From contig NC_068985.1 in assembly GCF_001194135.2 (NCBI RefSeq), positions 15,149,754 to 15,200,918 of the forward strand: a stretch of DNA of 51,165 nt, in the 5' to 3' direction. The notes under the pieces are model-generated. The model saw only the letters and a list, made by a program, of their open reading frames with translations, was not told the DNA's origin and ran no database searches. The translations under genes and the position numbers were made by a program. Positions 32,236 to 40,493 of this stretch are shown here, piece by piece. This stretch comes from Octopus bimaculoides. Taxonomy: Eukaryota. Within the stretch, counting starts at the first letter, position 1; each line of letters starts with the position of its first letter.

Positions 32236-32400
32236 NNNNNNNNNNNNNNNNNNNNNNNNNNNNNNNNNNNNNNNNNNNNNNNNNNNNNNNNNNNNNNNNN
32301 NNNNNNNNNNNNNNNNNNNNNNNNNNNNNNNNNNNAAAACATAAATGAAAACTGGCGCCCCCGTTTTAAAATAGATCCAAAAAAACAAAAGTAGCACTAT

Positions 32401-32465
32401 TGGAGAAAGCCGACATTGATCCCGGTAGCTCTCGCATGCGAAACGAGCGCACTACCACTTCACCT
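32401..32465 (-). pseudogene. tRNA-Ala pseudogene (anticodon reads CGC), 5' end damaged
   Basis: TGGAGAAAGCCGACATTGATCCCGGTAGCTCTCGCATGCGAAACGAGCGCACTACC. Confidence 0.8.
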
Positions 32466-32568
32466 CGATGTTTGTTATGCATATGAAAAGAAATCGCAGA
32501 ATTTAAAAAGCATATGACAATGATATCAAGTAACAGACAACGAAATTAAAAAACAAAATTAGTTTCAC

Positions 32569-32637
32569 TGGAGCATCCAGACATCGTTCCTGGTACCTTC
32601 CACATGCAAAGCAAGTGCTCTACCAACTAATTCTCCC
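32569..32637 (-). pseudogene. tRNA-Ala(TGC) pseudogene
   Basis: Alignable to consensus with many CpG transitions and a small deletion. Confidence 0.8.
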
Positions 32638-32737
32638 GTTGCTGGCCATAGGTTTTATGTATATGAAAATTTAAAAAATAAACCGGAATTTCAAAAGTAA
32701 ATGAAACAAAATTTATTAAATTAAAACGCAGCTTTCC

Positions 32738-32810
32738 TGAAGAATCTGGGAATCTATCCCTGTACCTCAGGAAGGCAAAGTGGGCGCTCTGCTCTCTCAA
32801 CTATTTCCCC
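32738..32810 (-). pseudogene. tRNA-Ala(TGC) pseudogene
   Basis: 73-nt alignable, heavily substituted, ends ...CTATTTCCCC. Confidence 0.72.
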
Positions 32811-32934
32811 GGCGAACGAACGTTGGTTTTATTTTTTCATGTATAGAAAAATTTTCAAAAGATCCGTGAATTTCAAGAGTAAATGAAAATGAAATGAAAC
32901 AAGAGACAAGATATGGAAACAAAACTAGTATTAC

Positions 32935-33007
32935 TGGAGAATCTGTGGACTGTTCCCGGTACATATCGCATACAAAGTGAGCGACCAATATTCTGAGCTA
33001 ATTCTAT
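32935..33007 (-). pseudogene. tRNA-Ala pseudogene
   Basis: Alignable; shares private changes (GACCAATATTCTGAGC..ATTCTAT) with 34768-34840. Confidence 0.78.
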
Positions 33008-33126
33008 GCTGCATAAACATAGGTTTTGCTATGTATGTGAATATTTTTAAAAAGCCCAGGAAATTCAAAAGAAATTGAAAAAGATATCAAGTAATAAACA
33101 AGTTATTAAATACAAAACAACTCCAA

Positions 33127-33196
33127 TGGAGAATCATAGAGTTGATACCGACACCTCTCACATGCAAAGCGGGTGTTCTACCATCTGAGTTCTTCC
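33127..33196 (-). pseudogene. tRNA-Ala(TGC) pseudogene
   Basis: Alignable; shares TGGAGAATCAT, GACACCT and flank GTTGGCGCTCCCAGG with 34961-35034. Confidence 0.78.
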
Positions 33197-33324
33197 GACG
33201 GTTGGCGCTCCCAGGGGTATTGTACTGTATATGAAAATTAAATCAAAAATTTCCGGAATTCCAAAACTAATTGAAAACGAAATCAATTAATAGAAAAACT
33301 ATTAAAATCAAAAATCAGCTGCGC

Positions 33325-33397
33325 TGGAGAACCCGGGTATCGATCCCGGTACCTCTCTTATGCAAAGCGAGCGCTCTACTAGCTGAGATAATTCCCC
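33325..33397 (-). pseudogene. tRNA-Ala(TGC) pseudogene, lightly decayed
   Basis: T-arm intact, two anticodon-stem mismatches and a D-stem change. Confidence 0.85.
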
Positions 33398-33512
33398 GTT
33401 GAACGTCTATGCACATTTGTTATGCATATGAAAAGTTGAAAACATACCCGGAATATCAAAACTGAATGAAATCAAGTTATAAGTAATTTATTAAAACGAA
33501 AATACAATTCAA

Positions 33513-33585
33513 TGGAGAGTCTGGACATCGATCTCGATACCTCTCGCATGCAAAGCAAGCGCTCTATAATCTGAACTAATTCCCC
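33513..33585 (-). pseudogene. tRNA-Ala(TGC) pseudogene
   Basis: 73-nt alignable, scattered substitutions in T and D arms. Confidence 0.83.
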
Positions 33586-33705
33586 GGTTACAGACCAGAG
33601 GTTTTTGTTTTGTATATGGAAATTTAAAAAAAAACTTGAATTAGAAATGTAAATGAAAATGAAATTAACTAATAGACAAGATATTATAAACAAAAAGTGG
33701 TTTCA

Positions 33706-33779
33706 TGAAAGAATTCGGTTATCGATCTGGGTACCTTTCACAAACAAAGCGAGCGCTCTACCTTCTGAGATAATTACCT
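33706..33779 (-). pseudogene. tRNA-Ala pseudogene followed by tandem copies of its 5' end
   Basis: Alignable body, then GAGATAATTACCT repeated three times (33767-33808). Confidence 0.75.
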
Positions 33780-37767: not shown

Positions 37768-37840
37768 GGGAAATTATCTCAGATGGTAGAATACTCGCTT
37801 TGCATTCGAGAGTTTCCGAGTTCAATACGCTTACTTTCCA
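37768..37840 (+). pseudogene. tRNA-Ala(TGC) pseudogene
   Basis: 73-nt alignable, T-arm decayed. Confidence 0.75.
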
Positions 37841-37962
37841 ATGAAGTTTCTTTTGCTTTTAATAACTTGCCTATAATTTGATTTCATTTTCATTTAGTTT
37901 TGAAATTCCGGGATATTTTGAAAATATTTCTTATACATAGAGAAATCCTTTATTCGCTAACC

Positions 37963-38035
37963 AGAGAATTATTTCAGATGGTAGGCCGATCACTTTGCAC
38001 GTGGAAGGTACCGGGATCGACGTCCGCATTCTCCA
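37963..38035 (+). pseudogene. tRNA-Ala(TGC) pseudogene
   Basis: 73-nt alignable, D and anticodon arms decayed. Confidence 0.75.
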
Positions 38036-38150
38036 ATAATACTACTTTTGTTTTTAATAACTTGTCTATTACTTGATTTCATTTAGTTTTGATAGACTGG
38101 CTTTGTTTTCAACATTTTATATGCACAACAAACTTCCTAAATCGGCGATT

Positions 38151-38223
38151 GGGGAATTAGCTCAGATGGTAGAGCGCTCGCTTAGCATGCGAGAGATACC
38201 GGGATCGATACCCGGATTCTCCA
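38151..38223 (+). tRNA. tRNA-Ala-AGC: tRNA-Ala(AGC) inside the tandem array, intact stems
   Basis: Consensus body with variable-loop AGATA instead of AGGTA; T4 at +11. Confidence 0.9.
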
Positions 38224-38475
38224 TTACAACTACTTTTGATTTAATTAATGCTCTTTCTACTATTTGATTCCTTTTACATTTATCTTGGAAATCCCGGGTT
38301 TTTAGGTGGTGGAACGCTTATCTTGTATTCTACAGGTACCGACATCGATGCTCGGGCTCTACAATGAATTGTCTTTTAGTATTAATAACTTGTCTATTAC
38401 TTGATTTCATTTTCTTTTGGTATTCTCGGTTTGTATTAAACTCGTCATATGCACTCGATACGCATTCAATCTTTA

Positions 38476-38527
38476 AAGCGCTCGCTTTGCATGTTAAAGG
38501 TAACGGGATCGATATACGGTTTCTCCA
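38476..38527 (+). pseudogene. 5'-truncated tRNA-Ala(TGC) pseudogene
   Basis: AAAGCGCTCGCTTTGCATGTTAAAGGTAACGGGATCGATATACGGTTTCTCCA. Confidence 0.72.
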
Positions 38528-38979
38528 ATAAAGCTACTTTTGTTCTTAATAACTTGTTTATTGCTTTATTCCATTTTCATTTACATTTGAAATTCCGAGA
38601 TTTTTTTTTTTTTTCATATACATAACAAAAACCTCTGGCCATTAACCGGGGAATTAGCTGTGTTTTACTAACATGCTTATTACTTCGTTTCATTTCTTCA
38701 GCCTTGAGTTGGTGAACTTTTTCCTTTTCCATATGAAAAGTAAAATAAGAATGGAGAGGAGATGCCTGTCGCACGGAATATTTCGGAAAAGATGGACGAC
38801 TGTAGCAAGAATTTTGAGAGTGAATGAACCTGTTTGAGCGAGAAATCAAAGAGCCTACCAAAGGATTCAATAGTTGGAATGTGATTTCTGGTGTCTGTTA
38901 CGTGCCTCACTTCATAATTGTTTTTTTCGTTCACTTTTGTTTTTCATCCGAATTTTATACTTATTTATCCTTGATTCTA

Positions 38980-39106
38980 CAGGGCATCCACAAAGTCTGG
39001 GTACAGGGAGTAAATAAAATCGAAACATAAACAATTAAATATAAGAAATAATAATTTCTTAAAGTATGTGTTAATCCCTATGTACCCAGATTTTGTGGAC
39101 ACCCTG
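38980..39106. mobile_element. 127-bp monomeric copy of the same MITE
   Basis: TA flanks (38978-79, 39107-08), same TIRs, one internal unit. Confidence 0.88.
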
Positions 39107-39281
39107 TATAATTATGTGTATCTTCATGTTGTTGTTCCATTTGTCCACCGACCCTTTGTCTGTCTTCGTATCGTCCACTATTTTTTTTACCTTTATGTTT
39201 AATAAAGAAAAGAGATTTGAAATACCGGGATTTTCTTTCTTTAATTTTCATGTACATGACAAAAACCTATAATCGCTAACC

Positions 39282-39356
39282 GGGAGATTCTCTCTCATGT
39301 GGTATGGCGCTCGCTTTGGATGCATGAGGGACAGGGGTCGATGCTCGGATTCTCCA
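39282..39356 (+). pseudogene. tRNA-Ala pseudogene
   Basis: Alignable, heavily substituted, ends GATGCTCGGATTCTCCA. Confidence 0.7.
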
Positions 39357-39450
39357 ATGAAGCTACTTCTGTTTTTAATAACTTGTTTATTACTTCATTT
39401 CATTTACTTTTGAAATTCCGGGTATTCTTTTTTATTTTCATATACATATA

Positions 39451-39727
39451 GGCGCAGGAGTGGCTGTGTGGTAAGTAGCTTGCTTACCAACCACATGGTT
39501 CCGGGTTCAGTCCCACTGCGTGGCATCTTGGGCAAGTGTCTTCTACTATAGCCTCGGGCCGACCAAAGCCTTGTGAATAGATTTGGTAGACAGAAACTGA
39601 AAGAAGCCCGTCGTATATATGTGTATGTATCTATATGTATGTGTGTGTATATGTTTGTGTGTCTGTGTTTGTCCCCCCAACTTCGCTTGACAACTGATGC
39701 TGGTGTGTTTACGTCCCCGTAACTTAG
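39451..39727 (+). mobile_element. SINE family A in the array spacer (runs into a gap)
   Basis: Near-consensus head directly after CATATACATATA. Confidence 0.9.
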
Positions 39728-40320
39728 NNNNNNNNNNNNNNNNNNNNNNNNNNNNNNNNNNNNNNNNNNNNNNNNNNNNNNNNNNNNNNNNNNNNNNNNN
39801 NNNNNNNNNNNNNNNNNNNNNNNNNNNNNNNNNNNNNNNNNNNNNNNNNNNNNNNNNNNNNNNNNNNNNNNNNNNNNNNNNNNNNNNNNNNNNNNNNNNN
39901 NNNNNNNNNNNNNNNNNNNNNNNNNNNNNNNNNNNNNNNNNNNNNNNNNNNNNNNNNNNNNNNNNNNNNNNNNNNNNNNNNNNNNNNNNNNNNNNNNNNN
40001 NNNNNNNNNNNNNNNNNNNNNNNNNNNNNNNNNNNNNNNNNNNNNNNNNNNNNNNNNNNNNNNNNNNNNNNNNNNNNNNNNNNNNNNNNNNNNNNNNNNN
40101 NNNNNNNNNNNNNNNNNNNNNNNNNNNNNNNNNNNNNNNNNNNNNNNNNNNNNNNNNNNNNNNNNNNNNNNNNNNNNNGCCGGGATCGATGCTTGGATTC
40201 TTCAATAAATCTTTTGTTTTTAATATCTTCTGTGTTACTTGATTTCATTTCCATTTCCTCTTGAAATTCTGTAATTTCTTTAATCTTTATGTAAATAACA
40301 AAAACTGGTCGGTCCTAGCC

Positions 40321-40393
40321 GGTCTATTAGCTCAGTTGGTAAAGCTTTTGCATTGCATTCCTGAAGTAGCGTATTTGATGCTCGGATTTTCTA
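40321..40393 (+). pseudogene. tRNA-Ala(TGC) pseudogene, last unit of the right arm
   Basis: TATTAGCTCAGTTGGTAAAGC...TTGCAT...GATGCTCGGATTTTCTA, then a ~19-bp tandem duplication of its 3' end. Confidence 0.68.
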
Positions 40394-40493
40394 ATAAAAT
40401 GTTCGGATTTTCTAATAAAATCTTGTTATTTGAAAAACTGAAGCATTCAAGAACAAAAATTAAAAAAGAAGCAGGAAACTGAACGATATTACT

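What the first reader, a model, noticed from the sequence alone, without database searches (positions are those of the whole stretch)
32381..40421. An 8-kb tRNA-Ala satellite: ~33 tandem tRNA-plus-spacer units of ~190 bp
Seen: a 73-nt tRNA-Ala body and a conserved ~115-bp spacer recur with a period of 167-198 bp. Most copies are visibly decayed and most readable anticodons are TGC. The spacer carries a T4 terminator at about +11 and a CATATACATA box near -30 of the next unit, so each unit is a complete Pol III cassette. Established: tandem tRNA-Ala clusters serve alanine-rich secretion in Bombyx silk gland, and tDNA clusters can act as chromatin boundaries. Inference: this is either a relic of a tissue-specific tRNA-Ala amplification or a tDNA-derived satellite. 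I do not know of a description of it in cephalopods.
Basis: partly seen in the sequence, partly recalled or inferred. Interest (0 to 1): 0.85.

Follow-up and report, generated by a model that had tools for sequence, protein, structure and literature searches.

The report
Decayed tandem array of tRNA-Ala genes
This stretch is an old, mostly dead tandem array of about 34 alanine-tRNA gene copies, lying in two opposite-facing blocks inside a larger alanine-tRNA gene cluster; a handful of copies are still kept intact, and this is an ordinary kind of tRNA gene-family evolution rather than a new type of element.

Summary
The repeat is real. A ~190-bp unit (73-nt tRNA-Ala body plus ~115-bp T-rich spacer) recurs about 34 times between 32336 and 40417.

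Four points change the picture:
- It is not one head-to-tail array. Fifteen pieces lie on the minus strand (32381-35328) and twenty on the plus strand (35328-40415), diverging from an inversion junction inside a tRNA T-arm.
- Units are only ~70% identical to each other (K2P 0.39). There is no homogenisation, so it is not a satellite in the usual sense, and TRF misses it.
- Five transposon insertions interrupt it. The 451-N gap sits inside one of them, so continuity across it cannot be shown.
- In most copies the tRNA body has decayed like the spacer. Five bodies stay 92% identical while their flanks are 72-77% identical, which points to selection or gene conversion on a few live genes.

The spacer occurs only inside the window's tRNA-Ala cluster, unlike the truly dispersed SINEs here. 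Best reading: a birth-and-death relic of a local tRNA-Ala(UGC) amplification. The organism could not be confirmed, and genome-wide copy number could not be tested. Ordinary kind; modest interest.

The parts
32336..35328 (-). Left arm of the array: 15 nhmmer pieces (14 units) on the minus strand, transcription pointing left. It is bounded on the left by the assembly gap 32236-32335.
35328..40417 (+). Right arm of the array: 20 unit pieces on the plus strand, transcription pointing right. It contains four insertions and the 451-N gap.
35245..35426 (.). Inversion junction, with the breakpoint at 35328. The left unit is cut at tRNA position ~72 and the right unit at tRNA position ~57. The flanking spacers form a 79%-complementary inverted repeat (35245-35325 / 35346-35426).
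   Evidence: It lies in contiguous sequence more than 3 kb from any N run.
32381..32462 (-). Unit 1, truncated; anticodon column CGC; tRNA 0.80 identical to consensus.
32466..32630 (-). Unit 2, decayed; TGC; 0.79.
32651..32808 (-). Unit 3, decayed; TGC; 0.76.
32831..33004 (-). Unit 4, decayed; TGT; 0.77. It is the paralogue (87-88%) of the split unit at 34225-34836 and shows that unit's empty insertion site.
33022..33195 (-). Unit 5, decayed; TGC; 0.77. Paralogue (83%) of unit 34856-35032.
33211..33395 (-). Unit 6; tRNA body 33325-33397, TGC, 0.92. It scores 29.0 bits, exactly at the Rfam threshold.
33405..33583 (-). Unit 7; tRNA 33513-33585, TGC, 0.86; Rfam 20.9 bits, below threshold. Spacer of the Y subtype.
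33593..33775 (-). Unit 8, decayed; TGT; 0.81. A 13-16-bp internal micro-duplication follows it at 33759-33810.
33818..33948 (-). Unit 9: spacer plus only the first 33 nt of the tRNA (33916-33948).
33960..34134 (-). Unit 10, decayed; TGC; 0.75; Y-type spacer.
34138..34201 (-).
34225..34836 (-). Unit 11, split into 34225-34308 and 34734-34836 by the 425-bp insertion; TGC; 0.80.
34309..34733 (+). Insertion of two tandem copies of a dispersed ~230-bp repeat ('REP_B'). It is flanked by the 16-bp target-site duplication CAAGAGG[C/T]AAGATATC.
   Evidence: alignment A1, with the empty site in the paralogue 32815-32945
34856..35032 (-). Unit 12, decayed; TGC; 0.76.
35043..35218 (-). Unit 13; tRNA 35148-35220, TGC, 0.96; Rfam 38.9 bits. 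ARAGORN does not call it; the D-stem and T-stem each carry a substitution.
35225..35328 (-). Unit 14: spacer only (Y type), ending at the junction.
35328..35452 (+). Unit 15: the last 17 nt of a tRNA plus a full spacer, starting at the junction.
35461..35640 (+). Unit 16; tRNA 35459-35531 with a mutated TAC anticodon; 0.80; Rfam 35.3 bits; Y-type spacer.
35647..35772 (+). Unit 17; intact tRNA-Ala(AGC) at 35647-35719 (ARAGORN; Rfam 49 bits). Its spacer is cut at unit position ~122-128 by an insertion.
35773..36093 (-). Reverse-oriented, 5'-truncated copy of the tRNA-headed SINE ('SINE_A'). It is accompanied by loss of part of a unit.
36094..36223 (+). Unit 18: the last 13 nt of a tRNA plus spacer.
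36231..36392 (+). Unit 19: tRNA 5' fragment (36231-36247) plus spacer pieces (36238-36299, 36300-36392; Y type).
36401..36572 (+). Unit 20, decayed; TGC; 0.85.
36587..36791 (+). Unit 21: tRNA 5' fragment 36587-36603 plus body 36642-36703; TGC; 0.90, with an internal rearrangement.
36805..36976 (+). Unit 22; intact tRNA-Ala(TGC) at 36805-36877, the best in the window (Rfam 64 bits; 0.99 to consensus). Its spacer is cut at the upstream box by SINE_A.
36977..37409 (+). Full SINE_A copy (~390 bp; tRNA-like head, internal microsatellite, (GTAAAAGA)n-like tail). It is inserted in the upstream box of the next unit.
37410..37586 (+). Unit 23, decayed; TGC; 0.81.
37592..37759 (+). Unit 24, 5'-truncated tRNA; TGC; 0.90.
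37771..37955 (+). Unit 25, decayed; TGC; 0.78.
37966..38144 (+). Unit 26, decayed; TGC; 0.80; Y-type spacer.
38151..38303 (+). Unit 27; intact tRNA-Ala(AGC) at 38151-38223 (Rfam 59.3 bits); short spacer.
38302..38469 (+). Unit 28, heavily decayed; TGT; 0.69.
38474..38640 (+). Unit 29, 5'-truncated tRNA; TGC; 0.85.
38648..38745 (+). Unit 30: 12-nt tRNA 5' fragment plus a weak spacer fragment.
38746..39213 (.). Insertion of unrelated DNA, including a palindromic MITE-like element at 38965-39116.
39214..39275 (+). Unit 31: spacer 3' fragment.
39294..39448 (+). Unit 32, decayed; TGG; 0.81. Its spacer is cut at the upstream box by SINE_A.
39449..39727 (+). SINE_A copy, 5' ~260 bp, running into the gap.
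39728..40178 (.). Assembly gap (451 N). It sits inside the SINE insertion on its left side and starts mid-tRNA on its right side.
40179..40307 (+). Unit 33: the last 25 nt of a tRNA plus spacer.
40326..40417 (+). Unit 34, heavily decayed; TGC; 0.72. This is the last unit. It converges on the intact minus-strand tRNA-Ala(AGC) at 40494-40566.
26995..29099 (.). Context: three intact tRNA-Ala(AGC) genes left of the array (26996-27068 +, 27580-27652 -, 29027-29099 -). Their flanks differ from the array's.
40494..47077 (.). Context: six intact tRNA-Ala genes right of the array: 40494 - AGC, 40983 + AGC, 43293 + AGC, 46022 - CGC, 46625 - TGC, 47004 + TGC. Three further decayed array-type units lie at 44772-44935 -, 45536-45639 - and 45753-45826 -.

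Best explanation
The region is a fossil of a local amplification of one tRNA-Ala(UGC) gene.

Inferred steps:
- A complete Pol III transcription unit of ~190 bp was multiplied head-to-tail, most simply by unequal crossing-over or replication slippage. The unit held an upstream TATA-like CATATACATA box at about -33, the 73-nt tRNA with internal A and B boxes, and T4-T5 terminators from +11.
- One block was later inverted, with a breakpoint inside a tRNA T-arm.
- A two-unit segment was re-duplicated.
- SINEs, a MITE-like element and another dispersed repeat inserted much later.

Shown from sequence:
- The family evolved by birth and death. About 25-28 copies lost function and now drift neutrally with AT-biased substitutions and indels.
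- The tRNA bodies of about 3-6 copies have been held close to the functional sequence while their flanks diverged. The best are 36805 (TGC), 38151 (AGC) and 35647 (AGC), then 35148, 33325 and 35459.

Inferred function: the maintained copies, together with nine intact tRNA-Ala genes on either side carrying AGC, UGC and CGC anticodons, supply alanine tRNA. The decayed copies have no function of their own.
For: Unit anatomy and recurrence:
- Searches give 35 pieces (E down to 1e-50), a T>=4 run in 29/29 units, and the box at about -33.

Local, not dispersed:
- The spacer consensus hits 35 times, all at 32519-40305 or 44779-45824.
- Two real dispersed repeats have >=15 and >=20 copies spread over the whole 51 kb.

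Old and not homogenised:
- Median pairwise identity is 0.70 and spacer K2P is 0.39.
- There is no lag periodicity, and TRF is silent.

Neutral decay of most copies:
- tRNA columns are 0.81 and spacer columns 0.80 identical to consensus.
- About 20 bodies score below E=10 against the tRNA covariance model.
- A- and B-box columns (0.76) are below the rest of the body (0.82).
- T-run conservation (0.885) equals the general T-column level of 0.85-0.89.

Maintenance of a few bodies:
- Among the five best copies, bodies are 0.92 identical pairwise, against 0.72 for upstream and 0.77 for downstream flanks.
- Decayed copies give 0.69, 0.71 and 0.76.
- The substitutions in 35647 (C29>U, A66>G) both leave G-U pairs.

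Real history rather than artefact:
- There are 7.4 kb of N-free sequence.
- A TSD-flanked insertion has its empty site in a paralogous unit.
- SINE copies are about four times younger (K2P ~0.10) than the units they interrupt.

Known kind:
- Homogeneous, parallel tDNA clusters that include pseudogenes are widespread in eukaryotes (PMC2888827).
Against: - No expression or Pol III occupancy data exist, so the 'live' status of the preserved copies is inferred only.
- Gene conversion from the neighbouring intact genes could keep bodies similar without each copy being used.
- The amplification mechanism and the inversion are inferred from the end state.
- A chimeric contig at 35328 cannot be excluded without reads.
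- Genome-wide distribution of the spacer could not be tested, because no eukaryotic DNA collection was available. The metagenome scan found 0 hits.
- The link between preserved bodies and the Y-type upstream spacer is only suggestive (Fisher one-sided p=0.047; Mann-Whitney p=0.064).
Confidence: 0.8

Rival explanations
1. The unit is a tRNA-Ala-derived SINE (or a satellite born from one) that is dispersed genome-wide. The array would be a local pile-up or tandemisation of retroposed copies.
For: The unit has a tRNA-like head plus a ~115-bp body, which is SINE-sized. Cephalopod genomes are reported to hold very many tRNA-derived loci ascribed to SINEs (PMC6962438). A genome-wide search could not be run.
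Against: - A T4-T5 Pol III terminator lies 11 nt after the tRNA in the consensus and within 18 nt in 29/29 units. Transcripts would therefore not include the 'body'.
- There is no A-rich or simple-repeat tail and no TSD at unit borders; units abut head-to-tail.
- There are zero copies outside the tRNA-Ala cluster, while the genuine SINEs in this window have >=15-20 scattered copies.
Confidence: 0.05
2. The array is kept for a function of its own. Options are a developmentally or tissue-regulated reservoir of tRNA-Ala genes (as with the Bombyx silk-gland tRNA-Ala genes or the Arabidopsis SYY cluster), a TFIIIC-bound chromatin boundary, or a small-RNA source from the inverted junction.
For: - A few bodies are maintained within the array.
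- 4 of the 5 best bodies follow one upstream spacer subtype (p=0.047).
- The junction forms a 79% inverted repeat.
- There is precedent for a silenced tandem tDNA cluster reactivated in specific cells (PMC12308677).
Against: - Most units cannot fold as tRNA.
- A and B boxes decay faster than the rest of the body, and the terminator and upstream box are no better kept than composition predicts.
- There is no homogenisation.
- Transposons have inserted precisely between the upstream box and the gene in several units.
Confidence: 0.08
3. The array, or its two-arm structure, is an assembly artefact of a gap-rich short-read scaffold.
For: The window has 15 N runs, and the array touches two of them. 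The unit count across 39728-40178 is unknown. Palindromic junctions can arise from chimeric contigs.
Against: - Units differ by ~30%, so they are individually unique and are not collapsed or expanded copies.
- 32336-39727 is contiguous.
- The junction is more than 3 kb from any gap.
- The insertion with a TSD and a paralogous empty site, and the age difference between SINEs and units, are signatures of real evolution.
Confidence: 0.05

Closest known systems
Homogeneous tandem tDNA clusters of eukaryotes (survey of Bermudez-Santana et al. 2010, PMC2888827)
   Same: Adjacent tDNAs lie <1 kb apart, belong to one isoacceptor family, are mostly parallel in orientation, and include pseudogenes. Such clusters turn over rapidly by duplication and loss.
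   Different: This one is unusually dense (about one copy per 190 bp), is mostly dead, and is split into two divergent arms. No mollusc was in that survey.
Arabidopsis tandem tDNA clusters (the Ser-Tyr-Tyr 'SYY' cluster, PMC12308677; the tRNA-Pro cluster, from memory)
   Same: Whole tRNA genes with their flanks were amplified by tandem duplication into tens of copies at one locus.
   Different: The plant units are much more homogeneous and mostly intact, are epigenetically silenced, and are reactivated in specific cells. Here most copies are mutationally dead, and nothing is known about expression.
Bombyx mori silk-gland-specific tRNA-Ala gene cluster (from memory: Underwood et al. 1988, Mol Cell Biol; not checked here)
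   Same: Clustered tRNA-Ala genes in an invertebrate, with upstream AT-rich elements thought to modulate Pol III transcription.
   Different: The Bombyx genes are functional, are a tissue-specific isodecoder, and are not described as a 190-bp-period array of pseudogenes. No link to alanine-rich products is shown here.
Entamoeba histolytica tRNA gene arrays (cited in PMC2888827)
   Same: tRNA genes organised as long tandem repeats.
   Different: The Entamoeba units carry several different tRNAs with short tandem repeats between them and are homogeneous. This array has a single isotype and is highly diverged.
tRNA-derived SINEs
   Same: A tRNA-related head with A and B boxes and a unit length under 200 bp.
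   Different: There is a terminator directly after the tRNA, no tail and no TSDs. Units are strictly local and head-to-tail.

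Membership tests
Eukaryotic nuclear tRNA-Ala gene (Pol III type 2) | Cloverleaf that passes a tRNA covariance model or ARAGORN | tested here: met
   In the array, 36805 scores 64 bits, 38151 59.3, 35647 49, 35148(-) 38.9, 35459 35.3 and 33325(-) 29.0, against a gathering score of 29. ARAGORN calls three of them. About 20 other bodies fail.
Eukaryotic nuclear tRNA-Ala gene (Pol III type 2) | G3:U70 alanine identity pair and an Ala anticodon | tested here: met
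   The intact copies read GGGGAAT...ATTCTCC, giving G3-U70, with AGC or TGC anticodons. The rule that G3:U70 defines alanine identity is established knowledge.
Eukaryotic nuclear tRNA-Ala gene (Pol III type 2) | T>=4 terminator shortly downstream | tested here: met
   29 of 29 array units have one within 18 nt, and 19 have it at +11.
Eukaryotic nuclear tRNA-Ala gene (Pol III type 2) | Transcription by Pol III and a mature, aminoacylated tRNA | not testable with these tools
   This needs tRNA-seq and ChIP.
Homogeneous tandem tDNA cluster (PMC2888827 definition) | Neighbouring tDNAs <1000 nt apart, same amino acid, parallel orientation | tested here: met
   Spacings are 149-206 bp, larger only across insertions. 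Every tRNA in the window is Ala. Units are parallel within each arm, with one divergent junction.
Satellite DNA | Long head-to-tail arrays of one monomer | tested here: inconclusive
   There are 14 + 20 units in two opposite arms, covering only ~5 kb of monomer sequence. Both ends of the array run into gaps.
Satellite DNA | High similarity between monomers (concerted evolution) and/or higher-order repeats | tested here: not met
   Median identity is 0.70. Lags 1-8 give a flat similarity profile. TRF finds nothing.
Satellite DNA | High genomic abundance | not testable with these tools
   No genome of the source organism was available. The metagenome scan found 0 hits.
tRNA-derived SINE | Pol III transcript that covers the head, body and tail, with no early terminator | tested here: not met
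   T4-T5 runs start at +11 after the tRNA.
tRNA-derived SINE | Dispersed copies, each flanked by target-site duplications and ending in an A-rich or simple-repeat tail | tested here: not met
   Units abut directly. The spacer is absent outside the cluster, while the true SINEs in the window are scattered.
tDNA / ETC-type TFIIIC boundary element | B-box retained under selection | tested here: not met
   In decayed units the B-box columns are 0.757 identical to consensus against 0.822 for the rest of the body (Fisher p=0.024, in the wrong direction).
tDNA / ETC-type TFIIIC boundary element | TFIIIC occupancy and insulator activity | not testable with these tools
   This needs ChIP and reporter assays.

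The most novel reading that the evidence does not exclude
The array would not be mere debris. It would be a lineage-specific, regulated tRNA-Ala locus in which the Y-type upstream spacer (…GATATTCCGG-TTTGTTTTCAACATTTCATATGCACAACAAAC) marks a small set of genes switched on in particular tissues or stages, like the Bombyx silk-gland tRNA-Ala genes or the Arabidopsis SYY cluster. The surrounding dead units would act as heterochromatin-forming padding, or the inverted junction as a small-RNA source.
Probability: 0.07. Interest if true: 0.55.

Novelty: new member of a known kind. Interest (0 to 1): 0.27.

Why it matters
It gives a clean, dissectable example of birth-and-death evolution in a nuclear tRNA gene family. 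One 190-bp Pol III unit was amplified about 35-fold. Most copies decay neutrally, while a few bodies stay fixed despite equally old flanks.

It also has a practical side for annotating large invertebrate genomes:
- Counts of "tRNA-derived loci" there are usually ascribed to SINEs, whereas this locus shows that tandem pseudogene arrays contribute too.
- Such arrays are invisible to TRF at 70% identity.
- It warns against counting such loci as functional tRNA genes.

It does not open a new biological question by itself.

Tried and rejected
- TRF on the window found no ~190-bp array, because the units are too diverged. I replaced it with BLASTN and nhmmer models.
- Higher-order repeat test: mean spacer identity at lags 1-8 is flat in both arms. 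The only exception is one two-unit segmental duplication.
- Mirror-symmetry (recent palindrome) test: best partners across the arms are not anti-diagonal, so I rejected it.
- Organism identification: a retroelement ORF (47396-47884) searched against 5.8 billion proteins gave at best 54% identity, and only to unnamed metagenome proteins. This failed.
- Related loci elsewhere: an exact-pattern scan of metagenome contigs with the best spacer block found 0 hits. No eukaryotic genome collection was available.
- Literature: eight searches found no description of nuclear tRNA arrays in cephalopods. The Albertin 2015 octopus genome paper is not held, and PMC7290008 was irrelevant.
- Selection on Pol III control elements in dead units: rejected.
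- Association between the Y-type spacer and preserved bodies: only borderline.

Full report

ARAGORN finds 12 intact tRNA genes in the window. All are tRNA-Ala (8 AGC, 3 TGC, 1 CGC), they lie on both strands between 26995 and 47077, and only three fall inside the claimed interval. Rfam adds two weaker ones there. Tandem Repeats Finder reports no ~190-bp array in 32381-40421.

A sensitive BLASTN with the tRNA-Ala body gives a different picture. Decayed tRNA-like segments recur every 149-206 bp, mostly 163-198 bp, from 32401 to 40391. An nhmmer model of the whole unit recovers 35 pieces, with E-values down to 1e-50.

The unit consensus is tRNA-Ala(TGC) followed by this spacer:

ATGAAGCTACTTTTGTTTTTAATAACTTGTCTATTACTTGATTTCATTTACTTTTGAAATTCCGGGTTTTTTTTTAAATTTTCATATACATAACAAAAACCTTTAGTCG

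A 26-nt spacer block matches 15 times at <=3 mismatches, against 0.00 expected from shuffles. So the repeat, its period, and the count of about 33-35 units are real and far beyond chance.

**2.

- Anticodons: 17 of 25 readable positions are TGC, two are AGC, and the rest are single-base mutants (TGT x3, CGC, TAC, TGG).
- Terminator: all 29 units with a mapped 3' end have a T>=4 run within 18 nt. In 19 of them it starts exactly at +11, usually followed by a second T-run.
- Upstream box: a CATATACATA-like box (<=3 mismatches) sits at about -33 in most units.

These sequence statements are correct.

**3.

*(a) Two arms.* Pieces from 32381 to 35328 are on the minus strand, and pieces from 35328 to 40415 are on the plus strand. 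Both arms start at a tRNA 3' end at the junction and run away from it. The left unit is cut at about position 72 of the tRNA and the right unit at about position 57. The flanking spacers form a 79% inverted repeat. The arms are not mirror images unit by unit. This is therefore an old inversion, or an old inverted join, and not a recent palindrome. The junction lies in N-free sequence more than 3 kb from any gap.

*(b) Divergence.* Median pairwise identity between units is 0.70 and spacer K2P is 0.39 (0.23 to the consensus). This explains why TRF is silent. Mean identity is flat for lags 1-8 in both arms, so there is no higher-order repeat. The exception is one two-unit segmental duplication, 32831-33195 against 34225-35032, at 83-88%. 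Two spacer subtypes exist.

*(c) Insertions.* Unit-model hits cover only 67% of the non-N bases. The rest is mainly five insertions:

| Coordinates | What it is |
|---|---|
| 34309-34733 | Two copies of a dispersed ~230-bp repeat |
| 35773-36093 | Reverse, truncated copy of a ~390-bp tRNA-headed SINE |
| 36977-37409 | Full copy of the same SINE |
| 38746-39213 | Unrelated DNA with a palindromic MITE-like element |
| 39449-39727 | The same SINE, running into the gap |

The insertion at 34309-34733 is flanked by a 16-bp target-site duplication, CAAGAGG[C/T]AAGATATC. The paralogous unit at 32815-32945 shows the empty site.

*(d) The gap.* The left edge of 39728-40178 lies inside the SINE, cut at about position 259 of 389. 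The right edge begins mid-tRNA, at unit position ~46-48. The two sides are not continuous, and at least ~200 bp are missing. The same strand and unit type on both sides fit a continuing array, but that cannot be proven. The array's left end abuts another gap (32236-32335), and the sequence left of that gap has no unit homology.

**4. Local or dispersed?**

Inside this window the answer is no.

- The spacer consensus gives 35 hits, all at 32519-40305 or in three relic units at 44779-45824.
- The two inserted repeat families used as controls have >=15 and >=20 copies scattered from 2 kb to 47 kb.
- A terminator 11 nt after the tRNA is incompatible with the spacer being a SINE body, and units abut without tails or TSDs.

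A genome-wide test was not possible. The protein database holds nothing close to this organism (best 54% identity), and a metagenome scan with the spacer block found nothing.

**5. Dead or alive?**

In the decayed units the tRNA columns are no better conserved than the spacer columns (0.81 against 0.80 identity to consensus). About 20 bodies do not reach E=10 against the tRNA covariance model.

The internal promoter boxes are, if anything, worse preserved: A box 0.763 and B box 0.757, against 0.822 for the rest of the body. The T-runs (0.885) match the general level of T columns (0.85-0.89), while G/C columns are at 0.72-0.78. This is neutral, AT-biased decay. It gives no support to retention of TFIIIC sites.

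Five copies stand out: 33397(-), 35220(-), 35647(+), 36805(+) and 38151(+).

| Set of copies | tRNA body | Upstream 60 nt | Downstream 60 nt |
|---|---|---|---|
| Five well-preserved copies | 0.92 | 0.72 | 0.77 |
| Decayed copies | 0.69 | 0.71 | 0.76 |

Values are mean pairwise identities. These copies are therefore not young duplicates. Their bodies have been held by purifying selection and/or by gene conversion limited to the tRNA.

Four of the five follow the Y-type upstream spacer, against 5 of 19 decayed copies (Fisher one-sided p=0.047). A rank test gives p=0.064. I treat this as suggestive only.

**6. Surroundings**

The array sits in a tRNA-Ala-only cluster at least 20 kb long. Nine further intact genes flank it. 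They fall into two groups with their own upstream AT-rich boxes:

- AGC genes: …CTTAAATATTTAAATAC…
- TGC/CGC genes: …TTATTAATATAGTATTAAGAAAA…

These genes share homology with each other and with the array essentially only across the 73-nt body (93-100%). Flank homology is limited to a few old pairs. The same pattern, conserved body and diverged flanks, thus holds for the whole cluster.

**7. Chronology (inferred)**

- First, amplification of the 190-bp unit (K2P 0.39 between units).
- Then the inversion and the two-unit re-duplication (12-17% divergence).
- Last, the SINE insertions (K2P about 0.09-0.11 between copies, the same as to copies elsewhere in the window).

**8. Mechanism**

Shown:
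- The unit is a complete tRNA gene with its flanks.
- The array is local, old, not homogenised and interrupted by later insertions.
- Most copies decay neutrally, while a few bodies are maintained.

Inferred:
- The array arose by unequal crossing-over or replication slippage.
- The maintained copies are transcribed by Pol III and, with the neighbouring genes, supply tRNA-Ala.
- The dead copies have no function.

**9. Comparison with what is known**

Homogeneous, parallel tDNA clusters that include pseudogenes are common in eukaryotes (PMC2888827; no molluscs were sampled there). Tandemly amplified tDNA clusters with regulated expression are known in Arabidopsis (PMC12308677). From memory, clustered tRNA-Ala genes are also known in Bombyx.

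Cephalopod genome papers report very large numbers of tRNA-derived loci and ascribe them to SINEs (PMC6962438). I found no paper describing a tandem tRNA array in a cephalopod, but the key octopus genome paper is not in the library.

The locus meets the definition of a homogeneous tDNA cluster. It fails the homogeneity criterion of a satellite and fails the defining features of a SINE.

**10. Verdict**

The 'relic of a tRNA-Ala amplification' reading is supported. The 'satellite', 'boundary' and 'tissue-specific' readings are not supported or cannot be tested. This is a new member of a known kind and of modest interest.

Noticed in passing
36977-37409 (+), 39449-39727 (+), 44980-45437 (-), ~45687-45740 (-): The ~390-bp tRNA-headed SINE has landed at least four separate times in the same orientation as the tRNA. 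Each time it sits 25-40 nt upstream of an array-type tRNA-Ala unit, in or next to the CATATACATA box. The flanking units are only ~65-75% alike while the SINE tails are ~90% alike, so these are independent hits. A TA-rich target preference seems more likely than Pol III-directed targeting, because the units were already decayed by then.
   Followed up: partly
35459-35531 (+): A tRNA-Ala body carries a valine anticodon (TAC) and still passes the Rfam tRNA threshold (35.3 bits). It has one compensated T-stem pair. G3:U70 is kept, but two acceptor-stem pairs are broken, so it is probably a dead copy rather than a mistranslating tRNA.
   Followed up: partly
35647-35719, 38151-38223 versus 26996, 27580, 40494, 40983, 43293: The two AGC copies inside the array carry the T-loop variant of the TGC/CGC genes (GATACCC). 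The AGC genes outside have GATGCCC. This suggests a T34>A34 anticodon switch within the TGC lineage, or patchy gene conversion. All three Ala anticodons occur in one cluster and differ by 1-2 bases.
   Followed up: partly
38965-39116 and 3632-3972: A palindromic, MITE-like element is inserted in the array. The same ~85-bp sequence forms a 4-copy tandem repeat at 3632-3972.
   Followed up: no
34366-34733; about 20 further copies between 4095 and 46904: A dispersed ~230-bp repeat ('REP_B', containing …GTCGACCTCGGCGGAATTTGAACTCAGAA…) is very abundant in the window. Here it occurs as a tandem pair with a 16-bp TSD.
   Followed up: partly
41593-41880 (-), 47396-47884 (+), 31035-31403 (-): Transposon coding fragments lie next to the cluster: a Tc1/mariner-like transposase N-terminus running into a gap, a reverse-transcriptase C-terminal fragment (Pfam RVT_1 in its homologues), and another retroelement ORF.
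   Followed up: partly
whole window: There are 15 N runs (10-775 bp) and very many microsatellites, several of them at gap edges. The scaffold is typical of a short-read assembly, so any copy-number statement for repeats here is a lower bound.
   Followed up: yes
33759-33810: A small 13-16-bp tandem micro-duplication (CTGAGATAATTAC…) lies at the 5' end of one decayed tRNA body. It is an example of slippage inside the array.
   Followed up: no
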